Made by a program: the position numbers and the translations under genes. A DNA stretch of 63,194 bases, the filler included, from Octopus bimaculoides (lineage: Eukaryota), in assembly GCF_001194135.2 (NCBI RefSeq). It is 7 parts of 7 records of this genome, joined end to end, with 100 filler letters (N's around TTAATTAATTAA, not from the genome) between each part and the next. Parts side by side here need not be neighbours in the genome. Positions count along the whole stretch, not along the records: positions 24,857 to 42,984 come from NC_068990.1; 6 more parts are not named here. One strand, written 5' to 3'. The notes under the pieces are model-generated. The model searched no databases. It was not told the DNA's origin and saw only the letters and a program-made list of their open reading frames with translations. Positions 24,857 to 41,950 of the stretch are shown here, in pieces (position 1 is the first letter of the stretch; each line of letters begins with the position of its first letter).

Positions 24857-25180
24857 TAGACAGTGTCACGTGACAACTAGCTGGGGCTGCCTGCTGGAGC
24901 CTAGCAGCAGATATAAAAAGGGGAACTTGACATGACGATCAGTCGGACGCTGACACTCGTTGATGCTGCATCGAAGAGGCCAGGGAATAGAAGAAAGAAG
25001 ACATACACCCAACACCGGAGCTGAAGACACCTCCGAAAGGAGGGGCCCCGCCACGTCAAAACGGTAGAAGAGTAGGGGCCGAAACCGGACGTGGTTCCTC
25101 CTGATGATGTCTTCAGCTAACTGGATCCTATAAAGGAGCTGTTGTGGTAGCAGACCACGAAACATGGTTGAAATTCCTCC
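24857..25180 (+). other. CpG/GC-rich island with E-box palindrome, TATA box and nested inverted repeats (retroelement terminal repeat or promoter)
   Basis: TGTCACGTGACA (24864-24875), TATAAAA (24912-24918), AGCTGAAGACA/TGTCTTCAGCT (25019-25029/25108-25118), CCTCC-GAAA-GGAGG, CCACGTC/GACGTGG and GGCCCC/GGGGCC. Confidence 0.5.
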
Positions 25181-25645
25181 TGTGGGGCAATAGTAGCAGA
25201 CAATAGAACATTTGATTGAGAAGTAAACTTCTAAATCATACAGCTTGACTTTGGTAGTTAGTGAAAATAATCACTTTAAAAATAGAAATTTTAGGCAATT
25301 TGTTTTGATTTCCAATGCCTCCATGAAAATGTGTGCAGAGATATATGTAAGTGTGTCTACATGTGAGTGTGTTTGTGTGACAGTCTTCTGTTTGTACCAT
25401 CTAACCAATTAAACAAGAATTGAAAATAGTAGTAATTGAATATGCTATCAGAAGTAAATCACATATCTGCACATTACATCACAATTACTATGAAGTGATA
25501 GACAACTATCATGAAATACAGATTCTTGATAATGTTATAAAAACTAAGTGTAAAATTTTCAATAGAATCGAAGCAATAAACAAGTGATATACAGAGGACA
25601 GAATAAAGAAGAAAAGAAGATACATACACACATAGACATACATGC

Positions 25646-25734
<89 letters not shown>

Positions 25735-26423
25735 GCAGGAAATAGAGTTTTAAGAATTATCAACATGAGCAATATTAGATGTTTACATTATGAGTAACCA
25801 TGGCTGCATGGTTAAGAAGCTGACTTTGCAACCTTTTGCAACCAAAAGATGGTTTTGGGTTCAATCCTAAAACATGGCACCTTGGACAAGCATCCAAGTG
25901 TCTTCTATTATAGTCCCCAGCCAGCTAATGCCTTCTGTGTGTGGAACTGTGGAAATTATACATATATGTGTGTGTGTGTGTATGAGCATTGTGAGTGTGT
26001 GTATGTGTACATCCAACTGTTTGACAACAGGTGTTGGTTTGTTTATGTTTCCCTGTAACGTAGCTGTTCAGCAGTCTTAACCAGTAAGTACCAGATGAAT
26101 TTGTTTGGCTAAACCCTTCAAGGCCATGTTCTAGCATGGCCTGAGCACAATGACTGAAACAAATAAAAGATAAATGATACCTAAAAAAATTTTTAAAAAG
26201 CGGCTGTGTGGTAAGAAGGTTGCTTCCAAACTACATGGTTTCTGGGTTCTCTCTTACAATGTGGTAATTTGGGCAAGAGTCTTCTCTACTAAGCCTTGGG
26301 CCAACCAAAATCTTGGGAGTGGATTTGGTAGACAGAATCAGATTGGAGCCTGGTGTAGCCATCTGGCTCACCAGTCCTCAGTCAAATTGTCCAACCTATG
26401 CTAGCATGGAAAGCGGACGTTAA

Positions 26424-26455
<32 letters not shown>

Positions 26456-28583
26456 AGAAACACATATAAGTGTGTGTATTTATTATATGTGTGTGTGTCT
26501 TTGTATCTGTGTCCCCCCCCCCCCAACACAGCTTGGGATGGGTTTTTACATTTCCATAATTTAGCAATTTGGCAAAAAGAGGTTGATAGAATAAGTACCA
26601 GGCTTTTAAAAAAAATAAGTATTGGGTTTGATTCATTCAACTAAAAATTCTTCAAGATGGTGCCCCAATATGGTTGCAGTGAAATGACTGAAACAAGTAA
26701 AAGATAAAAGAATAGAAAGAAGGAAGAAATAGTTGAAGATTGATAAAAATAAAAATAACTGTATATAACCTAATGTGGAGCTTACATGGTTCGGTTCCAA
26801 CCTGCTTCTCTAATATTCTCTATTATTCTCAAAAGTTTTTTTTTATCTTTCTAATGTATCACATTTATAATAAAATCTTCTCTATGTCTCCATAATTTTC
26901 ATCTTGCATTTTTTATTTTAGTCTTTTACATATTTCAGTCACTGAACTGTGGCTATGCTGGGGCACTGCCTTGAAGGGCCTAAGCCAAACAAAACAAATC
27001 AATGTAAGCAAACTATACCAGGTAGTATAGCACACAGACACAAAATCATACACACGCACATTTCAGTTTAATGTTTGGTAAATATACATAGTAGAGGAAT
27101 AAACAGAAGCATCTATTTTAAAAGTTATACACAAAAATTGAAAATAAGAGAATACCATCTAAAATTCATCGAACAATTTGCAAATGGCTCACCAGATTTT
27201 AATGCAGCAAATCAGTGAGAAGAATAACTGAATTAGTTTCATAATACTCCATGAATTTATGAAAGGACTTGAAAAGGTGACAGAGAAATATGTATAAAGA
27301 TCAGAACTGATGAACATCGGAATCATATAGATTTGGTTTACAAAAGAAACAATGAACTGAGAAACAGCAGAAAATAGAATATTTATAGGAAAATAGAAAA
27401 TTGTCATGGAATTTTATTCTTTTTATATGAAAATAGAAAAAATTTTTTGTATGAAAATAGAAATCATATGTTATTATGGGTCATAAAAGACAACCATCCC
27501 TCCAAAAATATTAAAAAAAAAGAACCGTAATGGTAAGTGAAAAGATGTCAGAAGCAGTTCAGTTGATAGAATACTGCTAATATTGGGAATCAAATCAGTT
27601 AAGTCTCACATAAAGTTCAGCTGAATATGAATGCTCTTACAGAGATGGGTTTATGTTCCATTAATGTTGACACATATATGTTCTGTATATGTTACAAATT
27701 AAGCTTTTTCAGTTTATTTGTAGTCTGAGAGTATGATGACTGGAGCCTGAAAGTGACTGTAGAGGTTATTGATAAAAACACAGAATATGATGTTTCGTTG
27801 TCTGATCCTGTAATAATAATTCTTGTCAGGCACACTGAGATGAACAGCTAAAAAAAAATTTTAATAAATTATATTTTCTTTATAAAACAATGACAGTTGT
27901 AGCTTGACTCCCCATCTACTACTCCCGATACAATCTTTCAACACCCCACATACGACTTCTACTCACCCCATGCCTTGAGAGGTCATCTGGGTACCTCATC
28001 TCCACTATTTGTCTCTTCACTGCTCATATCATCTCCCTCTCTTACTAAATATGAGTAACCATGCAGTTTCTTCACCTGAACCTGCTCTGTTGTTACTTTC
28101 TCATACTTTTACCCGTCATCTTCTAGCATAAAGCTATCTTTTCTTTTGGTTGTTATAGTCTTGCAAGCTGCATCACGACCTCACTAGTGATGGTGACACG
28201 AAGATCACACCCATGCTGTAAAACGGTTGGCATTAGGAAGGGCATCCAATTGTAGAAACCATACCAAAGCAACCATCAAAGCATGATGCAGTTCTTGGAC
28301 CCATTAGGTTGTGCCAAACCATCCAATCACGGAACATGGACATTAAATGTCATCATGGAACATGGACATTAAATGGCGATGACAATGATGACGATGGTGG
28401 TGTTGCAGAACAAGCAGCAACAGGAAATTTAGTTTAAGCCAATCACTGGAGCTTCTACACTATCACTTGATCTTGATCTGTGCAATGCAAGGCCATAAAT
28501 ATCCTGCAACAGAGACTTTGCTACCTGTAAAATGGGGATCACATTTGTGAAGTTTGAAATGTTTGGATTTAAACCTCTCCTTA

Positions 28584-29031
28584 ATCCCTTTGATATTAAC
28601 CCACCTCAGACCACCTCTGCTTATAAACTTCCACTTTTAGAGTGATTTAAATTTAAACCTTACTGTAAAATTTCATGTTAATTTATGAATCAAAATTCAG
28701 CTTAATAATTGCTTCAAATTTTAGTCCAAGGCCAGCAACTTTTAGAAAACTGGGGTTAGAAAATTATGTTAACCCCTGTACTTGAGTGATACTTTATTTT
28801 ATTGATCTCAGAAGGATAAAAGTAATGTTGACCCTGATAGAATTTGAACTCAGAGTGCAAAGTGTCACATGAAATATCATTGGGTATTTTCTCCAATTCT
28901 ATGACACTTCTATCAGCTTGCTGCCTTCAAATTAATGACAACAATTATTTTTAATAAATTCTTCATCATTTTCGAAATTAATTGGGACAAAGACAAGGTG
29001 TTTCAACAGAAATATAGTAAAACATGGGCTA
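28584..29031. mobile_element. TTAA/CCCTTT-ended (piggyBac-like) MITE interrupted by a family-A SINE (~28716-28930); an inverted second copy starts at ~29150
   Basis: Left end TTAATCCCTTTGATATTAACCC, degenerate right end ATGGGCTAA. The two halves match the reverse complement of 29150-29340. Another AAGGGTTAA end lies at 29697-29705. Confidence 0.5.
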
Positions 29032-30420
29032 AAGATATGATGACCTAATGCAAATTATTAATGTTAATTAATCATCTACTAATGATCCATGGCATTGCTT
29101 AAGCAGTACTAACATCACTACTCACCCACATATAAACACTGCAATAGATCAACCATTTTGTTATTGTATTTCTGTTGAGACAATACTTCTGATTCAATGA
29201 ATTTCAAAAATAATGAAGAATTTAGTAAAACAGCTTTGTAATTGGAAAATTGAAGTTAAAAAATATATTAACATGAAATTTTGATGGTAAGTCTTAAGTT
29301 GTATTACTTGAACACTTTAGTATCTAAACTGACCATGTCAGGCCCAAATATTGTACCTGTTTTATGTTCAAATCAGTCAGGTCTGGCTAAGATATAGTTA
29401 CTTTCTCAAGTCATGCTGACTCATAACAGCTGGTTTCCTGGTGTCCTCATTTTTGTCAGCTGAGTGGACTGGAGCAATGTGAAATGAAATATTTTGCTCA
29501 AGAACACATGTTGCATGGTCCAGGAATTGACACCACAATCTTATGAACATGAGTCCAATACCCCAATCACTATACCACACACCTCCTCCACCTGGCTCCA
29601 GCCTACAAATTTCAAAGCTACATGATAACACATGATTAATTCAAAACAATTTGATTGTATAAGCATTACACATTTGATAGAGCAATCTATATGCTGAAGG
29701 GTTAAGCAGAAAGTTTGTCATAGAGAAAAAGGTAGTTTTCGGTGGTTTGGTATCATGAGGGTTAAAATATGAAAGAATTTCAGGTCAGGAAAATATTAAA
29801 CAATGATAAAAAAGATACAAATCTGAAACATTTAATAGGTTAATGAACCAGGCTTCTTTCTGTAACATGTCCCTCACAATCCTCTTCTCATAGGATTGGG
29901 TCAGCTTCAAGCTGTAGCAAAAGTCACTTGCCTGAGGTTCCACAGTGGGACTGAACCCAAGATTACATAGTTGGGATGCAAGCTTCCTAACCATACAGCA
30001 ACAAAACATTTACACTTCCATCACCATCTACTAATAATATAATGTACTAATAATATAATACACAACCATAGCTGCCCACCACAATCACACATAAGACATC
30101 ATCTACTACTGTGCTCTATGATCTTAAATGCTAACAAAATTATCTAATTCTGTAACCTTCTCTATTAATTATTATCACAGGAAAAAAGTAACATTTTAGT
30201 TATTTTTTCTTTCATTCTTTTGGTGGTGTTTTTATTTCATTTAGATTGCTACTTTTTAATAGGATTATGCAATGTTTGTGCAAAAATAGCTTAGGCAAGT
30301 TTTTCTAAACAGATTAGTAAATAATAAAGACATTGCTGTGTGTCTTTAAATGGAATTACTTGATTAAATTGCTTAATTTTTGCCACAATGTATATTTAGA
30401 AAATTATTCATACACATGTG

Positions 30421-30465
<45 letters not shown>

Positions 30466-30682
30466 NNNNNNNNNNNNNNNNNNNNNNNNNNNNNNNNNNN
30501 NNNNNNNNNNNNNNNNNNNNNNNNNNNNNNNNNNNNNNNNNNNNNNNNNNNNNNNNNNNNNNNNNNNNNNNNNNNNNNNNNNNNNNNNNNNNNNNNNNNN
30601 NNNNNNNNNNNNNNNNNNNNNNNNNNNNNNNNNNNNNNNNNNNNNNNNNNNNNNNNNNNNNNNNNNNNNNNNNNNNNNNNNN

Positions 30683-30741
<59 letters not shown>

Positions 30742-30755
30742 TACACACATGCACC

Positions 30756-30802
<47 letters not shown>

Positions 30803-31584
30803 ATATGCATACATACATATGCACCATGTGTATATATGTGTGCATGTATATATATATGCGTGTGTGTGTGTGTGTGTACACTCCCACATACGCATGCTAA
30901 GAGACACATACCTACACACAAATATAGAGTGTGTAAGTGTGTCTTTTATAAATGTTTATAAATAGAAAAGTACAAAAACACATATATGTAGCCTAAATAG
31001 AAACATATATAATTCTGCACATATTGCCATTATGTGTGTGTGTGTGTATGTGCATGTGTGTGCACATGTGTGTGTGTGTGTGTGTGTGTGTATGTGATTA
31101 TCATTTTTACATCCAATTTTTCCACGCTAGTATGGAGTGGATGTGATTTATTAAGGTTGTATTTTATGATTGTGTTCACTTACTGCCACCAATTCTTACT
31201 GTCTTTCAAGTAAAGTTTAATGTTAAATTACTGAGCTGTGGGCTGTAAACAATTTTGTCACTACCCACGCTATGTCAATGGAAACACATATGGCAACCAA
31301 CACATCATCATCATCGTTTTTAATCTACACGTTTTCATGCTTGTTGAAGCAGACAGTATTCACTGAAGCAGGTTTTCTCTAAACGGACAACATTCTTGTT
31401 GCCATTGCTCTCCTTTTCCCCAAGCATATTTCCTTGTGGTAGGATGTTTCCATGGGAAAATAGAAGCAACACCGCTTTTAGGATAGTGATACTTGTTTAC
31501 AGCTGTGGTGTGATGTCAAGACAAGGACATACACACACACACACACACACACATCGTCGTTGCTTTAACATCCAAGCATCAGGT

Positions 31585-32075
31585 GTAGTGTGCAAGAGAG
31601 AACACTGCACTTGTATGGTTATGTGATGCATATGGACGAGGACAGCTGTGTAAAGAAGTGCCAGATTCTAACTGGGGAGAGAACCTGTAGAAGAGGTAGA
31701 CCCGGGAAGACATGAGATGAAGTCATGAAGCATAATCTTTGAATGTTCAGTCTCATGGAAGTTATGAAAAGTGACCAAAACTCTTGGTGATTTGCTGTGC
31801 TTGAGAAGACATGTGAAGCCAAGTGAAATCGTATTTGTGGCTAGTGCTGGTGACACATAAAAAGCTTCTGTTCCAGGGATATGTAAAAGGCATCTGTACC
31901 ATTGACATGTAAAAGGTACCCACTGCAAAAAAGTGGCTGGTGTTAGGAAGGGCATCCAGATGTTGAAACCAAACCAAATCAGACTGGCGCTTGGTACAAC
32001 TCTCTGGCTTACAAGTCCCAGTCAAGCCATCTAACCCATGTCAGCATGGAAAATGGATACTAAATGCTGATGATG
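31585..32075 (+). mobile_element. RTE-clade LINE 3' end plus (ATG)n-tailed 3' UTR shared with a SINE family
   Basis: Translates as ..QERTLHLYGYVMHMDEDSCVKKC....TCRRGRPGKT*DEV..DQNSW*FAVLEKT, matching the RTE C-terminal RRLRWxGHVxRM..GRPRKTW pattern. The same 3' tail ends SINE copies at 1-60, 26200-26452, 28150-28400 and 33190-33510. Confidence 0.7.
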
Positions 32076-32635
32076 ATTTTCCAAACTCACACAAGGCAGA
32101 TGAATTTTACCGCAGCAATTTTTTTATGGCTGGATGATGCCCTTCATTAACCTTTACCTGTTTCTAAGCAAGGTAATATTCTTCCATTGCCAGACATGCC
32201 TATGCAGAACATTGGAAATGAATGACAGTGCTCCTATGAGACTGGAACTCATTTACAAATTACAAATCACATGATGTCAAGACAAGGTGACACAAACACA
32301 AATATACAATGGGTTTCTCCTCAGTTTCTGTATAGCAAATCCATTCACAAGGCTTTGGTCAGCCTAGGGCTATGGTAGCAGACACACCTCCAAAGTGCTA
32401 CATACAGGGACTGAACCTAAAACGACATGGTTCGGAAGCTAACTTCTCAATCATATATATTGATGGATGACTGTTTGAAGTTTCAGCTCTCACTGAAATT
32501 TTGAAGTCACCCATCGTCTCATAAAAACTTACCCATCGTCTCATATAACTAGTATATACTCTACAAAAGGTATTGAGTAATTCTTCACTTTAATGTTAAA
32601 TTATATTTATTATAATTCAACAGAAAGACACAACA

Positions 32636-32671
<36 letters not shown>

Positions 32672-32894
32672 CGCACTTATGTATGTATGTATGTATGTTT
32701 ACTGTTTTATTCTTTTATGCATTTCAACCCATGCTGGGGCACCACTAGTTTTATCACCCTTTTAATGGCCATTCTTTTTTGACTGGCTGGGAAATCATTA
32801 GGGTCTGTGGCTGAGTTTAAGCTCATTTCAATAAGATTGTTTGGTAATGATCCTTTCATGTAAGGAGCTTTGTTTTTATTTCTTCATCAGCCTT

Positions 32895-33105
32895 AATTTC
32901 TGGTCTTCTAATTTCCTTGATTGTAATCCCATGGATTACTAAGCATGGAGCACATTTGAGTTGCTTTGCCTGCAACACCAAGGCTGAGCTGGTGGCTGAG
33001 ATCAAGGAGATGTTCAAAGACATTCTCAGGGGTATAGTAAGGAATGCATGCAGTAGGTTCTAGAGCCATCTTGAGGATGTGATGGATGCTGAGTAGACTT
33101 TAATA
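32895..33105 (+). mobile_element. Tc1/mariner (maT-like) transposase C-terminal fragment
   Basis: FWSSNFLDCNPMDY*AWSTFE...CNTKAELVAEIKEMF...VRNACSRF*SHLEDV, i.e. the WPPNSPDCNPxDY..W motif family. Confidence 0.7.
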
Positions 33106-34206
33106 TTCAGGCCATAATCTATTTGAAATATTTTGATTGTTTAAAATACTTTCATATTTGGATGGTATATATATATATATATATATATATCAAGCCAGTG
33201 GAACATAAAAGGCACCATTCGAGTGTGACCAATGCTAGCGCCGCCTGACTGGCACCCATACCGATGGCATGTAAAAATCACCATTTGAGCATGGTCGATG
33301 CCAGCATTGCCTGACTGGCTCTCGTACTGGTGGCATGTAAAAAGCACCCACAACTCTCTCAGAATGGTTGGCATTAGTTAGGGCATCCAGCTGCAGAAAT
33401 CTTGCCAAATCAGATTGGAACCTGGTGCAGCCTCCTGACCTGCTAGTCCTCAGTCAAACTGTCCAACCCATGCCGACATGGAAAGTGGACACTAAGCGAC
33501 GATGATGATATGCATACACATATACCTATGACAATCATCTTTCCTTTTCTGTTTACCATATGCACTCATAAGACTTTGGCTGGCTTGGATCTAAAGAAAA
33601 AGACACATGCTGAGGATGCCACATAGTGGGATTGAACCCAAAGTCAGAACATTGTGAAGTACACTTCTTAAACCACATAGCTGTAGAATTCATAACCTTT
33701 CCTATCGCCTTAACATTATCATTATTTTCTCATAACTTTGAAGTCATTGGTCATATTAGAATACAATGCCAGCTGCAATACATTGTCTATGTGTCAATTA
33801 ACACTACATTATCTTAACTTAAAATAGTAATTCCATTCGTGTAATCAAAGAAATAGTTCATGACTGTACATGAGGCAAAACGCAAAGAAACTTTTGGATC
33901 TATCACCTGTGTTGCCAAAATATGTTTGTCTATAACAGCTGCATCTGAAGTGAGTATATGTTTTCAGTGCACATAAAATATACATTAATGTAGTGAGATA
34001 TGTGTCTGTGTATGTGTGTGCATATGTCTAAGATTATGTATAAAAATATAGATTTGCATAGGTGTATGTATTTGGTTGTGTGCATGTCTATCTATCTATC
34101 TCCCCATCTATCTATGTGTGTGTGTGTTAATATAAATGAAATTACGTAGATATACATATGTGAATATATATACATGTGTCTCTCTATCTACCTACCTCTC
34201 TCTCTC

Positions 34207-34277
<71 letters not shown>

Positions 34278-35329
34278 ATATATATGAATATACATGGATA
34301 TACATGTGTATAATATATATGTGTGTGTCTATCTATCTATCTATATGTCTGCCTGCCTGACTGTCTATCTCTCTATCAATACATATATAGGCAATAGTTA
34401 AAGGATGAAAAATGCTCCAATTTTTCTTCTGTTCTAATTCATATTAACATAATTGAAAAGTCTGTATGTGTCAACAAGTAACTTGTTTTTAATCTTAGTC
34501 TTTATGCCAGTTTTTACATGTTATCCAAAGCAGAAACTAGATTTCTCTCTACACTGAGCTCTATCACTTTAAAAAACAAATTTCATAAAAAAAGATTAAA
34601 ATAAAAAAAAAATAAGAACAAATGTTAAAATTCTAGATAGTTCATAACACAACATTCCTCCTTCTGCAACACATCTGAGAGAATAAAGTCATCTGAGAAT
34701 AATGAAAAACATCAGATGGCACAGCCAAGAAAAAAGAAGGAATGCTCTCTGAGGACAAAAAATTTAGAGGAGCTAGAATTGTTAATGATCACTGAGGTAG
34801 GAGAAGGAAGATGAAAAAGGGAAGAGTAGGCAGAGGATTATAATGAGGGTGAAGAGAAAGTGACAGAGGAAGTAGCAAAGGATAATGAACAGGAAGATGA
34901 CAATAATGAAGAAGTGGAGCCAAAAAAGGAAGAAGAGAGTAGCTATCTCGTTTTATGTGTATCAGAGTGGAAGTCCTAGATTCTGAAAGAAGGGAGCTGT
35001 TGACATGTTTAAGAATGTGAACTGGCATGGATTAAGGGGTGGGAGAAGATTTGGGGAGATTAACAACCATTTTGTAAACTGTCTTGTCAATGCAGAGACT
35101 GAAGATCTCAACCCACTCCACACATAAGACAGAATAGAAACACCTTTTCACCTAGTTTCTGCTCTCTCCTCCTATACAATATGTCCTACAGTTAGTCAAC
35201 ACAACAAGCTTATTTAGTTGTGCCAGGTCAGCAGCAAGTATTTGGCCACATCTGTGGATTTTGGTGTTGTGTTATTTTTCTTTGCCATCTCTCTCATCAT
35301 TAACTTCTTTCTTAACAAATAACTTTTAT

Positions 35330-36745
35330 ATGTAGAATTTCACAACTATGCAGAATTTCATGACTGAGATTCAGACAGAAATTTACAACTGTGAAACTTA
35401 GGCTGAATTTCAGAATGTGAAATTTATGCAGAATTTCAGTGTTGCAAATCTTAAGCTCAAATTTATAACTGAATTTTTAGGCTTTATCTCACAGCTGTGA
35501 ATTTCAGGCAAAGATTCACAACTGAAATTTAAGTAGAATTTCACTCCTGTGAAATTTAGACATAAATTCATATCTGTGAAATTTAGAGAAAGTTTCCCAA
35601 CTGTGAATTTTAGGCAGAATTTCACAACTACAAACTTTAGGAAGAATTTGTAGGCAACCTTATTTGAATCCAGTGTCGTCATGTTTTAATGAGAGTCATC
35701 TAGAGTTATCTCCCCCGTCACATCATTAACAACTAGGTGGTGCTTGTTAGATAGATATAAAAAGACATGCACAGCCAAGTAACATCCTCTTCTCCTCTCC
35801 CACGTGGCCTGAAGCTAACTACGTCTTCTACATCTCTGTTCCTGCTACAGGACAACCCTGCGTTGATTTGAATTTTGTTAAATCCTCTTTACCATTCATG
35901 GAAGGCAACAAGACAAAAACCTTTTCTTATTCAACTTCCATTCTGTTCTGTTGAATGTTAATATACAAGCTGTGTAAAATGTTCTCATCCCAGATCAGAA
36001 TAATTACTCCATGTACATGAAGTCTTCAAAAACTCATACGAGTTGTTGTTGTTTAAAGAAACTAGCTAGTGGATAGTTTCTGACGTCAGGGTCACCACTT
36101 TAGCGAGCTTTTAGCCCATTAATTTAATATAATGTTCGGTCATCCTTCGATAGCTGTAGGAATTAATCCAATGAGGAACAACAACAACTTGTATGAGTTT
36201 TCAAAGACTTCATGTACATGGAGTATTTCTTCCAATCAGGGATGAGAGCGTTTTACACAGCATGTATATTCACATTCAACAGAACAGAATGGAAGTTGAA
36301 TAAGTAAAGGTTTTTGTATTGCTGCCTTCCATAAATGGTATAGAAGATTTAGCAAAATTCAAATCAATGCAGGGTTGTTCTGTAGCAGGAGCAGAGATGT
36401 AGAAGACGTAGTTAGCTGCAGGCCACGTGGGAGAGGAGAAGAGAATGTTACTTGGCCGTGCGTGTCTTTTTATATATATCTCTAAAGAGTGCTACCTAGT
36501 TGTTAACGATTTGACAGGGGTGATAACTCTAGATAACTCTCATTAAAACATGACGACAATGGATTCAAATAAGGTTGCCTACAAATTTCACAACAGTGAA
36601 TTTTAGGCAGAATTTAGCAACTGTGTATTTAGGCAGCGTTTCACAAACATGAATTTTAGGGAGAATGTCACAATTATGATTTTTAGGCAAAAATTCACAA
36701 CTCTGAAATTGAGATAGTATTTCACAATGGGGATTTTTTGGCAGA
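35330..36745. repeat. Degenerate ~28-bp minisatellite (GTGAAATTTAGGCAGAATTTCACAACT), split by the foldback element
   Basis: Units run through 35330-35648 and resume at 36584-36745. Confidence 0.7.
35649..36583. mobile_element. Non-autonomous foldback DNA element (935 bp) with ~405-bp TIRs; termini and TSD are Ginger-like
   Basis: Arms 35649-36053 and 36177-36583 are reverse complements, with scattered mismatches and a 123-bp spacer. Ends are TGTAGGCAACC...GGTTGCCTACA. The 4-bp TSD AATT lies at 35645-35648 and 36584-36587. Confidence 0.9.
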
Positions 36746-38710
36746 TATTGAATGAATATAAGAATATCGTTAGTTTATGAGAATATTTCAATTATGATAC
36801 ACAAATGGAAAATAGAAAAAAAAATGATTTTGTAGTTGCATGTAGACATAGAGCTAAGCAAGAATACAATATAGAAATGTGCAACATACATACTCACATT
36901 CATATGTAGATTTCTGTACAAATATAAACTGAAAACTACATGAATACAAAGACAGACACATTCATGGTCAGTTTGATAGATACACATCTGTAGGGTCCTA
37001 TGTATGCTCATGTAAAACACACACATATACGCAGGTTTGTAAATCTCAACATATATACATGCATGTACCTACATTCACACACACAAATAAATACACAAAC
37101 TTCCAGAAATATTCCAATANNNNNNNNNNAATAAAACTAATATATATGCATATTATTTACAGATATTTATGTACATAAAGAGATGTATAAAAATAGTTCT
37201 TCATACTCATAGAAATACATATGGTTGTATGTATTTTTACATATGACATTATGTTACCCCCAAAAATGTTTTCTCCATAATACAAACCCAAGAACCAATA
37301 ATAAAAAATAGCAAATACTAATATAATTTTCCTTTTTTTTTTTTACTTCAGTTTTGGAATAAATGCAAGCATAAATAACATGAGGATTGTATGAGCATAT
37401 ATGAAAGAACTATACATACCAACACACAGGAAATATGGATATATATATATGGCAATGCATGAATACAGTGAAAGATGAATTTCAGGTGAACATGTTGTAG
37501 GACATATGAATAGAAACAATTGCAAACAGTTGCCATTCCAAGATGGAAAATATGAATACAAGTTGACTGAAAATATGCAGTTATATTATAAGGTGAAAAT
37601 AGCAATGTATATCAACAGGAGATATAAATGATATGGTTCAATAAATATGTAAGAACAGACAGAAACCACATAATATGAAGTTATTATATATATATATATA
37701 TATATATNNNNNNNNNNNNNNNNNNNNNNNNNNNNNNNNNNNNNNNNNNNNNNNNNNNNNNNNNNNNNNNNNNNNNNNNNNNNNNNNNNNNNNNNNNNNN
37801 NNNNNNNNNNNNNNNNNNNNNNNNNNNNNNNNNNNNNNNNNNNNNNNNNNNNNNNNNNNNNNNNNNNNNNNNNNNNNNNNNNNNNNNNNNNNNNNNNNNN
37901 NNNNNNNNNNNNNNNNNNNNNNNNNNNNNNNNNNNNNNNNNNNNNNNNNNNNNNNNNNNNNNNNNNNNNNNNNNNNNNNNNNNNNNNNNNNNNNNNNNNN
38001 NNNNNNNNNNNNNNNNNNNNNNNNNNNNNNNNNNNNNNNNNNNNNNNNNNNNNNNNNNNNNNNNNNNNNNNNNNNNNNNNNNNNNNNNNNNNNNNNNNNN
38101 NNNNNNNNNNNNNNNNNNNNNNNNNNNNNNNNNNNNNNNNNNNNNNNNNNNNNNNNNNNNNNNNNNNNNNNNNNNNNNNNNNNNNNNNNNNNNNNNNNNN
38201 NNNNNNNNNNNNNNNNNNNNNNNNNNNNNNNNNNNNNNNNNNNNNNNNNNNNNNNNNNNNNNNNNNNNNNNNNNNNNNNNNNNNNNNNNNNNNNNNNNNN
38301 NNNNNTATATATATACAAACATATATACATACATACATACATACATAATTCATACCTAAATACATAAATATAACATATGCATATATAAACCTTTTACTCT
38401 TTCCAAACATTAGACTGTGGACACGCTAGAGCAATGCTTTGAAGAATTTTAACTGAAAGAATCGACCCCAGTACTTCGTTTTTTTAAAGCCTTGTACTTA
38501 TCCTATCGATCTCTCGATCTCTGTTGCTGAACCACTAAATTATGGGGATGTAATGTAAACACACCAACATTGGTTGTCAAGTGGTGATGGAGGACAGGTA
38601 CAGACACAAAGATGTATGCATGCACATACATGTGTGTACATACACACACTTACACACATATGTGTATATAAATATACAACAATTTCATGTATATATATAT
38701 ATATATATAT

Positions 38711-38745
<35 letters not shown>

Positions 38746-38793
38746 NNNNNNNNNNNNNNNNNNNNNNNNNNNNNNNNNNNNNNNNNNNNNNNN

Positions 38794-38867
<74 letters not shown>

Positions 38868-39038
38868 ATATAAATAGTGAGGGATGTTTATATGCAATTT
38901 TACAATCAAAAGGCAGAAATATATACATCCCTAAAATGACTGAGGGCACTAACCAGCACCAGTATTGCTAGAAATAACAGTTAAAACTACACATATCCAC
39001 GAGAAATATAAATATATTGTGGTTATATGGTGTGTACA

Positions 39039-39112
<74 letters not shown>

Positions 39113-39189
39113 TACATATATATATATATATATATTGGTTTTGATGTTTGAGGCTCTAACAACAAACTCTTTCTTTGTCAGTCATAGTG

Positions 39190-41950
39190 CTTATGTTGAA
39201 TGTGATATTTAAGTCCCACAAATGTTGCAAGTATGAGGATTACAAATCTGTGCAGGTGGTATATTTGCAGCTGCTTTTCTTCTTTGCCATGCACACCAAA
39301 ACCTGTTAATGCTAGTTGCAACAAAGTTTTCAATACCATTTTGACACAACGATCTCAATATTGTTTGTTCCAAGGCTGTTTGCGCAAAAGTGTTGTGAGC
39401 TATCTTCATCTCTAAGAGGTTACTCTTCAGCTTGTCCTGATATCTGAGCCATGATCTATCAGCATTCCTGTGCCCACTTTCAAGCTGGCCATACATGTGG
39501 ACTTTGGGTATTCTTTCGTCACTCATTCTGATGACATGGTCAGCACAGTGCAATTGTGATTGTATAAGAAAGCTCTCAATTCCACCAATCTCACACTAGC
39601 TAAACAAGTCGGCATTACAACATTTGTCTTTTAGTGAATAACCACAGATTCTCCTCAAACAGTCTTTGCGGAAGATGTCTAGTTGGTTAATGTGTCGTCT
39701 ATAGGGTATCCACGATTTTGAGCTGTACAAGAAAGTAGTTAAAATGGCTGCTTCATAGACTTGTACTTTGGTGTCAAGTTTGATGCCCCTTTCATTCCAT
39801 AGGCGATGATGGAGTTTGCCAAATGTGTTGGTTGCCCTTGCAAGATGGTTGATGATTTCATCATGAAGGGAAGGGCTCAAATTCACTTTACTACATGTAA
39901 ATGACTTCACATAATTTAGGCTTTTCCTGTCAACCTGTATAGGAGTGTCAGAAAAACTGTGAACTGGTGGCCTTTGCTTGACACCTCAAATTTGCTTAGG
40001 AGTAGGGCAATGTTGGTAGATTACTTCCATCTTCTTTATGCTGATGGTCAAATCAAAAGCTCTACATGCAGCAGAAAACCAGTCTAGAAGTTCCTGAGCT
40101 TCCTATAAGGAGGTCATCAGCAAAAAGTAGATCATGAATGATACTAGTGTATAGAAGTTCTGGCTTTGAAATGCTGATGATTGAATAGCCCACCACTTGT
40201 TCAAAACTGGAATTTGACACCACTTTGTATGTCACCGAAAGCATACCTAAGTATCACTGAAAAGAAGAGTGCGAACAAAAGAGGGGTCATAACACAACCA
40301 TGCTTTTGTAATGTCAAAGGAAGCCGAAGATTCCACACCAGACATGACAGCAACCTTCACTCTCTCATGAAAGGAGATGATAACACTCACCATCTTGTCA
40401 GGTATACCAAGCTTTTTCATAACTTTCCATAGTGCTTGCTGGTTAACACTATTGAAGGCCTTAGTAAGGTCAATAAATATCAAAAACAACTCTTGATTTT
40501 TCTCACATACCCTCTCCATGACCTGTTGGAGGGAAAAGATCATGTCAATAGTGCCATGACCAGAGTGTGATTCTGGATAGATGTCATTTGTAACATGTTT
40601 GATGATCCTGGCAAGAATGAGTCGATCAAGAATCTTACCAGCAATAGACAGAAACGATATTCCATGATGATTATCACAGACACTTCACTGCACAGCCAGC
40701 TGTTGGACATCTGTGCTGTTATTGTTGAACCAATCTTGATGTTTATGAACAGGAAGTCCAAGAACCTTTACAGATGCAGAGTGCATTGTATCACGCAGAG
40801 CCTTCAAGATAATTCTATGTCATCATTGATATCAACAGTGTTGAGTGCAGTGTCCAACTTGATAGAGAGCTCACTCTGCTTTTCAACAGTTTTCAAAGGT
40901 AGAACATTAATGCGCTTAGGCACAGATGACTTTTGTAGTCTTGTGTATTTCAGATAGAACATAGCCTTACTAGAGTGAAGAGAATGGTCAGAGAGACATC
41001 AGGCCTTATGAAAGGAATGTGTAATGTTAAAGTTCCTAATATCTCATTTCTGAGTGATAATGTAGTTCATGAGATGCCAATCCTTAGATCTAGGATGCAC
41101 CCAGGTCATCTTGCAACAATTTCGCTGTTGAAAAAAGATATTTGTGATGCTTAGACTGAATTCATTCAACCTACACCATGGCAACTAATTTCACCCTCCC
41201 ATGCCTGGTAGTCAGTACCAACACAAGCGTTAAAGTTGCCCATAAGGATAAGTTATCCTTATGGTGACAACTGGAGCTGGTTGTAAAATTCATCCTTTTC
41301 CTGCTCAGTGCTGGTCATAGTTGGGGCATAGCAACTGGCAAGTATAGCATGAGTGTTGTGATCAAGTTCCAACATTAGTGTCATGATATGTCAGAAATAC
41401 CTTAGGGTAGAGAAAGAAGGGATCTAGCTATTTCTGTTTTGATGGCAAAACCAACACCAGACTAGTATGGCACATCTTCATTTCTTCTACACCAGAAAAA
41501 TATGTATCCATCTTTACCTTCTTCTAACTGTGATGATCCTGCAAATGAGTTTCACTAAGTGTAGCTATGTCAATGTTGTATTTCTTTAGTTCAAGGGCAA
41601 CCAATGTTGTTTTTCACTCTGGTGCTGAGTGACTGTCTTGGAGAGTGTGCACATTCCAAGAACTAAGGTTAATATTCTTAGATTTCTTCGTGTTCCATCT
41701 GCATTACAGAATAACCAGACAGCTGCAGTGGGCTGACAAGTTTAAGGTGAGTAAGCAAAGTTTTTGTTCTTTTCTCATCCATCCCCCTGTTGGGGAAAGC
41801 AGTGCTGTATCTAAATGGACCTGCTTTGTCACCACTGGAGGACAAGGACAACACAGTTACTCGTAAGTTCTGTGCTGGAACAGCCATCACCCAATGGTCA
41901 CCAACTGTGCAGAAATCCAGCAAGAGACTTCCAGTAATATCCTTTACCTG
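39190..41950 (-). mobile_element. Near-full-length decayed RTE (BovB-like) LINE
   Basis: Endonuclease start SWNVHTL..KKYNIDIATLSET (~41675-41550); RT FIDLTKAFNSV and DLLFADD (40133-40113); TFGKLHHRLWNERGIKLDTKVQVY; HVIRMSDERIPK..YGQL; C-terminal CNICG. Many stops and frameshifts. Confidence 0.9.

What the first reader, a model, noticed from the sequence alone, without database searches (positions are those of the whole stretch)
35649..36583. 935-bp foldback element with TGT..ACA ends and an AATT TSD
About 87% of the element consists of two ~405-bp inverted arms around a 123-bp spacer. Removing it with one AATT restores the host unit GAAGAATTTCAC exactly, which fixes the boundaries. TGT..ACA termini, long TIRs and a 4-bp TSD fit Ginger-type (integrase-related) DNA transposons; AWWT TSDs also occur in Sola1, so the superfamily is inferred. 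If transcribed within an intron it would form a ~400-bp dsRNA stem, a strong candidate A-to-I editing or siRNA substrate in a lineage known for heavy editing.
Basis: partly seen in the sequence, partly recalled or inferred. Interest (0 to 1): 0.7.

Follow-up and report, generated by a model that had tools for sequence, protein, structure and literature searches.

The report
Foldback DNA transposon in octopus satellite
This is a real but ordinary, non-coding "foldback" DNA transposon copy, 935 bp long with two ~405-bp inverted arms, inserted in a 27-bp tandem repeat of an octopus genome; its ends and target fit the Ginger2 group, but family membership and RNA editing could not be tested here.

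Summary
Positions 35649-36583 are two inverted arms (405 and 407 bp, 90.6% identical, K2P 0.10) around a 123-bp spacer. The ends are TGTAGGCAACC...GGTTGCCTACA, and AATT flanks both sides. Subtracting 939 bp puts the host's 27-bp repeat back in exact register, so this is a clean insertion, not a local duplication or an assembly artefact.

One caveat: AATT is a palindrome. Duplications of 4, 2 or 0 bp all restore the same empty site, so one copy cannot fix the boundaries.

The element has no coding capacity and matches no Pfam or Rfam family. TGTAG ends (TGTNR), a 4-bp AT-rich duplication with G before and T after, and long inverted ends fit Ginger2/TDD. They do not fit Ginger1, which targets CCGG/CCGT. 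AATT also fits the Sola1 target AWWT.

I found no other copy and no autonomous partner. No searchable octopus genome was on hand, so the superfamily stays inferred.

As RNA the element would fold into a ~400-bp stem (-643 kcal/mol, z = -56). No exon was detected nearby. A published survey finds no endo-siRNAs in molluscs.

A SINE-like repeat in the window places it in Octopus. Verdict: a new member of a known kind, of low interest.

The parts
35645..35648 (.). Left copy of the AATT target-site duplication (host-derived)
   Evidence: Sequence read. The phase test shows that one AATT belongs to the host unit.
35649..36583 (.). The whole foldback element, 935 bp, non-coding, with ends TGTAGGCAACC...GGTTGCCTACA
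   Evidence: The longest ORF is 40 aa. No protein, Pfam or Rfam match.
35649..36053 (+). Left arm (long terminal inverted repeat), 405 bp
   Evidence: 90.6% identical to the reverse complement of the right arm.
36054..36176 (.). Unique 123-bp spacer (loop); holds the short palindromes ACTAGCTAGT (36061-36070) and CTGACGTCAG (36080-36089)
   Evidence: It has no similarity to the arms or to the rest of the piece.
36177..36583 (-). Right arm, 407 bp (2-bp insertion relative to the left arm)
36584..36587 (.). Right copy of the AATT target-site duplication
35350..35644 (.). Host 27-bp tandem array, left part (interrupted target)
   Evidence: TRF reports period 27, the repeat finder families D1-D4, and the phase table.
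36588..36727 (.). Host 27-bp tandem array, right part; continues in register once 939 bp are removed

Best explanation
The element is one old, immobile copy of a non-autonomous cut-and-paste DNA transposon of foldback shape: two long inverted ends, a short unique middle and no gene. It inserted into one unit of a 27-bp tandem repeat in an octopus genome. Shown: it is an insertion of foreign DNA with a net gain of exactly 939 bp, symmetric TG..CA ends and a duplicated AATT. Inferred: a DDE transposase of the retroviral-integrase type, encoded by an autonomous Ginger2/TDD-like partner elsewhere in the genome, bound the two identical ends and cut them out. It then joined their 3'-CA ends to a 4-bp staggered cut at G|AATT|T, and gap repair produced the AATT duplication. 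The foldback shape would come from an internal deletion of a partner with long inverted ends, or from joining two copies of one end. Since insertion the two arms have drifted apart by about 10%, partly at CpG sites, so the copy is probably dead. It has no demonstrated host function. If a transcript runs through it, the RNA would form a ~400-bp stem that ADAR enzymes could edit.
For: Insertion: the 27-bp array phase is restored exactly by removing 939 bp, and the arms have no similarity to the flanks or the rest of the piece. The inverted repeat is far beyond chance: E = 2e-160, and the terminal 24-mer occurs only at the two ends with 0 expected. Non-autonomous: ORFs are at most 40 aa; six-frame stretches of the element hit nothing among 5.8 billion proteins or in Pfam; no Rfam family matches. 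Ginger2 fit: TGTAG matches TGTNR; the duplication is 4 bp; the G-AATT-T target matches the R....Y flanks and the AT-rich core of RTATAY; AATT matches the WRTH consensus of Ginger2 MITEs; long TIRs (up to 297 bp) are usual in the group; and Ginger2 occurs in a mollusc (PMC2836005; PMC3845634). Decay: K2P is 0.10 between arms, and 7 of 38 mismatches are CpG to TpG/CpA. dsRNA potential: MFE -642.6 kcal/mol against -221 for shuffles, z = -56. Octopus shows the strongest hyper-editing signal among 19 species, and a palindromic repeat in frog is heavily edited (PMC5625713).
Against: Only one copy was seen. None is elsewhere in the 18-kb piece, in 46 kb of related contigs, or in the metagenome, viral or prokaryote collections. 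None of those collections holds an octopus genome, so multi-copy status, duplication length and target preference are untested. No integrase gene was found in the piece. The duplication is AATT, not the preferred TATA of Ginger2. The 405-bp arms exceed every TIR length reported for Ginger (45-297 bp). AATT is palindromic, so the duplication could be 2 or 0 bp, and the ends would then not start with TGT. AATT also fits the Sola1 target AWWT. No transcription or editing data could be obtained.
Confidence: 0.55

Rival explanations
1. It is the same kind of object, a non-autonomous foldback TIR transposon, but mobilised by another superfamily. Candidates are Sola1 or Sola2 (4-bp AWWT duplications), a family making 2-bp AT duplications or none (ends then TTGT.. 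or ATTTGT..), or an undescribed superfamily.
For: AATT fits AWWT, called a hallmark of Sola1 (PMC3845634) and also seen in Sola2-type elements (PMC3627910). The palindromic AATT leaves duplication lengths of 4, 2 or 0 all compatible with the empty site. The arm length lies outside the range reported for Ginger.
Against: TG..CA ends of the form TGTNR are the Ginger/LTR-integrase signature. The only Sola1 termini read here start with GGACCG/GACC. The 8-bp flanks differ (GAAGAATT against AATTTCAC), which excludes hAT, Merlin, Zisupton and Novosib. There is no TA or TTAA duplication, which excludes Tc1/mariner, piggyBac and Kolobok.
Confidence: 0.3
2. It is not a mobile element. Instead it is a local palindrome made in place by replication template switching or by break repair (an inverted duplication).
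For: Only one copy is known. Arms of equal length around a short spacer are what fold-back priming produces.
Against: Neither arm resembles the surrounding 27-bp array or any other part of the piece, so the DNA is foreign to the site. The array continues in exact register once 939 bp are removed, with a 4-bp duplication at the joint. The ends are symmetric and of the TG..CA type.
Confidence: 0.05
3. It is an assembly artefact, a chimeric or fold-back read assembled as a palindrome.
For: The piece is a gapped scaffold. N runs lie at 30466-30682, 37120-37129, 37708-38305 and 38746-38793, the nearest 537 bp from the element.
Against: The arms differ at 38 substitutions and a 2-bp indel, with a CpG-decay share; an artefact would give near-identical arms. 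A unique 123-bp spacer lies between them. Both outer joints continue the host array in phase. There are no Ns inside the element.
Confidence: 0.03
4. The hairpin is a functional RNA gene or regulatory dsRNA, for example an ADAR sponge or target, or a hairpin-RNA small-RNA locus, kept by selection rather than being junk.
For: The predicted stem is extreme. The first 24 bp of both arms are identical. Octopus has exceptional hyper-editing.
Against: The arms diverge at a neutral-looking 10%, including CpG decay, with equal numbers of G-U-compatible changes on either strand (12 and 12), so there is no sign of selection for pairing. No Rfam match was found. No endo-siRNAs were detected in molluscs (PMC12479628). 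There is no evidence of transcription or of a host gene.
Confidence: 0.04

Closest known systems
Ginger2/TDD DNA transposons and their non-autonomous derivatives (Ginger2-1N1_NV; Ginger2_NA MITEs of Bombyx and Rhodnius)
   Same: TGTNR...CA ends, a 4-bp duplication at an AT-rich site flanked by R and Y, long terminal inverted repeats, non-coding short derivatives, and presence in molluscs (Littorina).
   Different: The duplication is AATT rather than the preferred TATA. The arms are 405 bp, against 45-297 bp reported. The inverted ends make up 87% of the element (foldback shape), whereas described derivatives are 252-651 bp with short TIRs. No integrase-encoding partner or second copy has been seen.
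Ginger1 DNA transposons
   Same: TGTNR ends, a 4-bp duplication, TIRs of 40-270 bp, and presence in a mollusc (Aplysia).
   Different: Ginger1 duplications are CCGG (75%) or CCGT/ACGG (24%). AATT does not fit.
Sola1 (and Sola2) DNA transposons and Sola1_NA MITEs
   Same: A 4-bp duplication of the form AWWT; non-coding derivatives exist.
   Different: The Sola1 termini read here begin GGACCG/GACC, not TGT, and their TIRs are short (19-36 bp in Sola1_NA, 12-21 bp in Sola2-type elements).
Palindromic or foldback repeats that serve as ADAR substrates (the palindromic Harbinger repeat of Xenopus; inverted Alu pairs)
   Same: A single transposon copy that can fold on itself into a long, nearly perfect dsRNA if transcribed.
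   Different: Editing is documented for those repeats. Here neither transcription nor editing could be examined.
Drosophila Foldback (FB) elements
   Same: Very long inverted arms that make up most of the element.
   Different: From my own knowledge, not read here: FB arms are built of internal tandem subrepeats and make 9-bp duplications. These arms have no internal repeats, and the duplication is at most 5 bp.

Membership tests
Ginger2/TDD | Termini follow TGTNR at the 5' end (CA at the 3' end) | tested here: met
   Both ends read TGTAG.... The criterion comes from PMC2836005. This holds only under the 4-bp duplication parse.
Ginger2/TDD | 4-bp target-site duplication in metazoans (5 bp in TDD-4/5) | tested here: inconclusive
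   AATT/AATT flank the element and the net gain is 939 bp. Because AATT is palindromic, 4, 2 or 0 bp (or an asymmetric 5 bp) all fit, and one copy cannot decide.
Ginger2/TDD | AT-rich target, preference RTATAY (MITE consensus WRTH / KHTM / TATA) | tested here: inconclusive
   The target G-AATT-T has the R and Y flanks and an all-A/T core. AATT fits WRTH but not TATA or KHTM. A preference cannot be judged from one site.
Ginger2/TDD | Autonomous partner encodes an rve-type integrase (H2C2 zinc finger + DDE) and shares the same ends | not testable with these tools
   No octopus genome could be searched. There is no integrase in the piece, and the O. bimaculoides proteins found have no DNA on record.
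Ginger2/TDD | Terminal inverted repeats of about 45-297 bp | tested here: not met
   The arms are 405 and 407 bp, longer than any entry in Table 2 of PMC2836005. This is a descriptive range rather than a strict criterion.
Ginger1 | Duplication CCGG or CCGT/ACGG | tested here: not met
   The duplication is AATT. The criterion comes from PMC2836005.
Sola1 | 4-bp duplication AWWT | tested here: met
   AATT fits AWWT, with the same palindrome caveat.
Sola1 | Ends shared with a DDD-transposase-encoding partner | not testable with these tools
   No genome access. The Sola1 TIRs read here (GGACCG...) do not resemble TGTAGG. The defining paper (Bao et al. 2009) is not held.
MITE (generic) | Short (<800 bp), non-coding, with TIRs and a duplication, and high copy number | tested here: inconclusive
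   Non-coding with TIRs and a duplication: met. Length of 935 bp exceeds the usual limit. Copy number is untested.
Drosophila-type Foldback (FB) | Arms made of tandem subrepeats; 9-bp duplication | tested here: not met
   The arms hold no internal direct repeats beyond two 8-mers, and the flanking duplication is 4 bp. The criterion is from my own knowledge.

The most novel reading that the evidence does not exclude
The copy belongs to an undescribed octopus-lineage family of Ginger2-derived foldback elements whose arms are longer than any reported Ginger TIR. Scattered through long introns, such a family would be a substantial source of the intramolecular dsRNA behind the exceptional ADAR hyper-editing signal of octopus.
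Probability: 0.1. Interest if true: 0.45.

Novelty: new member of a known kind. Interest (0 to 1): 0.2.

Why it matters
On its own the element matters little. It is one decayed copy of a non-coding DNA transposon in a repeat-rich, apparently gene-free stretch. It is a clean textbook case: because the element interrupts a tandem array, the empty site can be read directly from the neighbouring units. If the family proves abundant in octopus it would add a Ginger-type family to cephalopod repeat libraries, where most repeats remain unclassified. It would also give a defined class of self-pairing repeats to test against hyper-editing maps. Both points need the genome and reads that were not available here.

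Tried and rejected
I obtained no reads, no editing test, no small-RNA test and no presence/absence test.

2. Exact scans for the 22-nt terminus and for two blocks conserved in both arms found 0 hits in metagenome contigs, viral contigs and genome contigs. None of these collections is expected to hold octopus DNA.

3. I joined all open stretches of at least 28 aa from the six frames of the element into one pseudo-protein and searched 5.8 billion proteins, hoping for ORFs called in other copies. Nothing scored E <= 0.001. Pfam gave only a BAR_4 match at E = 0.13, which is noise.

4. Exact look-ups of window ORFs found nothing on record: the 90-aa junction ORF and a 114-aa LINE ORF.

5. Relatives of the window's LINE led to ENA assembly ERZ25071792 (L001, L002) and Logan run SRR30931882 (L003). 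At 57-66% protein identity these are another organism, and they hold neither the element nor the window's SINE-like repeat. A paper search for ERZ25071792 found nothing.

6. The O. bimaculoides proteins found through the SINE-like repeat have no DNA on record, so no octopus genomic DNA could be fetched.

7. Rfam at gathering threshold gave 0 matches. At E <= 1 it gave only sub-threshold lncRNA/miRNA noise of 17-26 bits. ARAGORN found no tRNA.

8. Pfam on all non-repetitive open stretches of at least 50 aa in 24857-39200 gave 0 families, so there is no transposase and no exon evidence.

9. I looked for other long inverted repeats in the piece. Everything except this element is microsatellite or N-run self-matching.

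10. Bao et al. 2009 (Sola) and Yuan & Wessler 2011 are not held. The Sola criteria therefore come second-hand from PMC3845634 and PMC3627910.

11. Alternatives rejected: each arm is not an independent TIR element or a solo LTR, because the inner arm ends (...GTTGTTGTT) are not the reverse complement of the outer ends and do not end in CA. Superfamilies with 8-bp, TA or TTAA duplications do not fit the flanks.

Full report
**The observation.** The stretch 35649-36583 is a 935-bp unit built from two inverted arms. The repeat finder reports arm pairs 35749-36053 / 36177-36481 (305 nt, 91%) and 35645-35763 / 36469-36587 (119 nt, 88%), which are one arm pair split by a 2-bp indel. blastn joins them into 411 columns at 90.3%, E = 2e-160. 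A global alignment of 405 positions gives 90.6% identity, with 24 transitions, 14 transversions and K2P = 0.10. The spacer is 123 bp (36054-36176). The ends read TGTAGGCAACCTTATTTGAATCCA on both strands. This 24-mer occurs nowhere else in the window, even with 3 mismatches allowed, and 0 matches are expected by chance. AATT lies immediately outside both ends.

**It is an insertion.** The element sits in a degenerate 27-bp tandem array (TRF period 27 at 35350-35640 and 36584-36727; the repeat finder families D1-D4). I located the array's core motif GCAGAATTTCACAAC on both sides. After subtracting 939 bp from the right-hand coordinates, the units at 35614, 36580 and 36607 are spaced exactly 27 and 27 bp, and the joined flanks read ...GGAAGAATTTCACAAC.... 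So exactly 935 + 4 bp were added to a unit that already held one AATT. Neither arm nor the spacer resembles the array or anything else in the 18-kb piece.

These facts argue against an in-place inverted duplication. They also argue against an assembly artefact: the arms differ at 38 substitutions and one 2-bp indel, 7 of the substitutions are CpG to TpG/CpA changes, a unique spacer separates the arms, and there is no N inside the element.

AATT is its own reverse complement, so it also extends the inverted repeat. Three symmetric parses restore the same empty site: duplication AATT with ends TGT..ACA, duplication AT with ends TTGT..ACAA, and no duplication with ends ATTTGT..ACAAAT. An asymmetric parse with a 5-bp AATTT duplication works too. 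The host array fixes the net gain at 939 bp, not the boundaries. Only several copies, or an orthologous empty site, can settle this.

**What the element contains.** It contains nothing that codes:
- The longest ORF is 40 aa.
- I joined all open stretches of at least 28 aa from its six frames and searched them against 5.8 billion proteins. Nothing scored E <= 0.001.
- Pfam gives only noise.
- Rfam gives nothing at gathering thresholds and only 17-26-bit noise at E <= 1.
- There are no subterminal or internal repeats. The spacer holds two 10-bp palindromes, ACTAGCTAGT and CTGACGTCAG, which I take as chance.
- GC content is 38%, against 34% in the flanks.

It is thus a non-autonomous element that would need a transposase supplied in trans.

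- Ginger1: 4-bp duplications that are CCGG (75%) or CCGT/ACGG (24%), TGTNR ends, TIRs of 40-270 bp (PMC2836005). AATT fails this.
- Ginger2/TDD in metazoans: 4-bp duplications, TGTNR ends, a preference for AT-rich RTATAY targets, TIRs of 45-297 bp, and a family in the snail Littorina.
- Ginger2-derived MITEs of Bombyx and Rhodnius: ends start with TGTTACGG, and duplication consensuses are WRTH, KHTM or TATA (PMC3845634).

This element starts with TGTAG, which matches TGTNR. Its target is G-AATT-T, with R and Y flanks and an all-A/T core. AATT fits WRTH, though not TATA or KHTM.

Sola1 also targets AWWT, and AATT fits that. However, the Sola1 termini read here start with GGACCG, and Sola2-type elements have 12-21-bp TIRs (PMC3627910). 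The 8-bp flanks differ, and there is no TA or TTAA, so hAT, Merlin, Zisupton, Novosib, Tc1/mariner, piggyBac and Kolobok do not fit.

Ginger2 is therefore the best fit. The element differs in three ways: AATT instead of TATA, arms longer than any reported Ginger TIR, and a foldback shape. I rate the Ginger2 assignment at about 0.55, another superfamily at about 0.3, and all non-transposon readings together at about 0.1.

- Scans of the metagenome, viral and prokaryote collections for the terminus and two internal blocks found nothing.
- Window ORFs are not on record.
- The window's LINE led only to another organism's contigs, which lack the element.
- The Octopus proteins I reached have no DNA on record.
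Editing, small RNAs, transcription and presence/absence polymorphism are all untested.

**Host and surroundings.** The piece is AT-rich (35% GC) and full of microsatellites and scaffold gaps. It carries:
- A degraded non-LTR retrotransposon on the minus strand at about 39209-41900. RVT_1 scores 32.6 bits, above the cut-off, with a weak endonuclease match and several stops and frame changes.
- Four same-strand copies of a SINE-like repeat ending in (GAT)n.

Translations of that SINE-like repeat hit nine proteins, all from Octopus bimaculoides and all from unrelated families (TBC1D15, kinases, GalNAc-transferase, Ras-GEF, VPS41 and others). The matches are short internal stretches that map back onto the window's repeat copies at 45-87% identity. 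In other words, those gene models contain exonised copies of the same repeat. This places the window in Octopus, either O. bimaculoides or a close relative (taxonomy), and agrees with the octopus-specific SINE expansion noted in PMC13218726.

No Pfam domain was found in any non-repetitive open stretch of 24857-39200. There is therefore no evidence that the element lies in an intron, although short exons would be missed.

**Function.** As RNA the element folds into one almost continuous stem: MFE -642.6 kcal/mol, against -221 +/- 7.5 for shuffles, z = -56. Twelve of the 38 arm differences are G-U-compatible on either strand, which gives no sign of selection for pairing.

Octopus has the strongest hyper-editing signal among 19 species, and a self-complementary Harbinger repeat is the main edited repeat in frog (PMC5625713). 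The idea that a transcribed copy would be edited is therefore reasonable and of a known kind, but it is untested here. The siRNA alternative is weakened by a survey that found no endo-siRNAs in molluscs, including O. bimaculoides (PMC12479628).

If the arms were identical at insertion, each has since changed by about 5%, so the copy is old and most likely immobile. This last point is inference.

**Verdict.** This is a real and cleanly delimited foldback DNA transposon copy, probably Ginger2-type, in an octopus genome. It is a new member of a known kind.

Noticed in passing
window 26200-26460, 28200-28420, 31840-32110, 33270-33540 (all + strand): Four diverged copies of a SINE-like repeat that ends in ...CCAACCCATGCCAGCATGGAAAGTGGACATTAAATGATGATGATG, i.e. 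a (GAT)n tail. Their translations match short internal stretches of nine unrelated Octopus bimaculoides proteins, which suggests those gene models contain exonised repeat copies. No tRNA-like head was found by ARAGORN.
   Followed up: partly
window 39209-41900, minus strand: A degraded non-LTR retrotransposon: weak endonuclease match, reverse transcriptase (RVT_1 at 32.6 bits) and a C-terminal region, broken by several stops and frame changes. The closest proteins are 57-66% identical and come from another organism's contigs.
   Followed up: partly
window 35350-35644 and 36588-36727: The host of the insertion is a roughly 17-unit, about 30%-diverged 27-bp tandem array (consensus near TGAATTTTAGGCAGAATTTCACAACTG). 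Whether it is a satellite or the inside of a larger repeat was not examined.
   Followed up: partly
window 30466-30682, 37120-37129, 37708-38305, 38746-38793: Four runs of N (217, 10, 598 and 48 bp), mostly inside TA/TG/ATAG microsatellites. The piece is a gapped scaffold, and the piece holds many dinucleotide repeats.
   Followed up: no
window 36061-36070 and 36080-36089: The spacer of the element holds two perfect 10-bp palindromes, ACTAGCTAGT and CTGACGTCAG. The second contains TGACGTCA, the CRE consensus (from my own knowledge). This is probably chance.
   Followed up: no
L001 4849-6205 and L002 12201-15383: The contigs of ENA assembly ERZ25071792 that carry the LINE relatives are long (283-338 kb, 63x) and also hold Gypsy-like RT/RNase H/integrase ORFs. 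They look like an animal host genome inside a metagenome assembly. The organism is not identified, and it lacks the window's SINE-like repeat.
   Followed up: no
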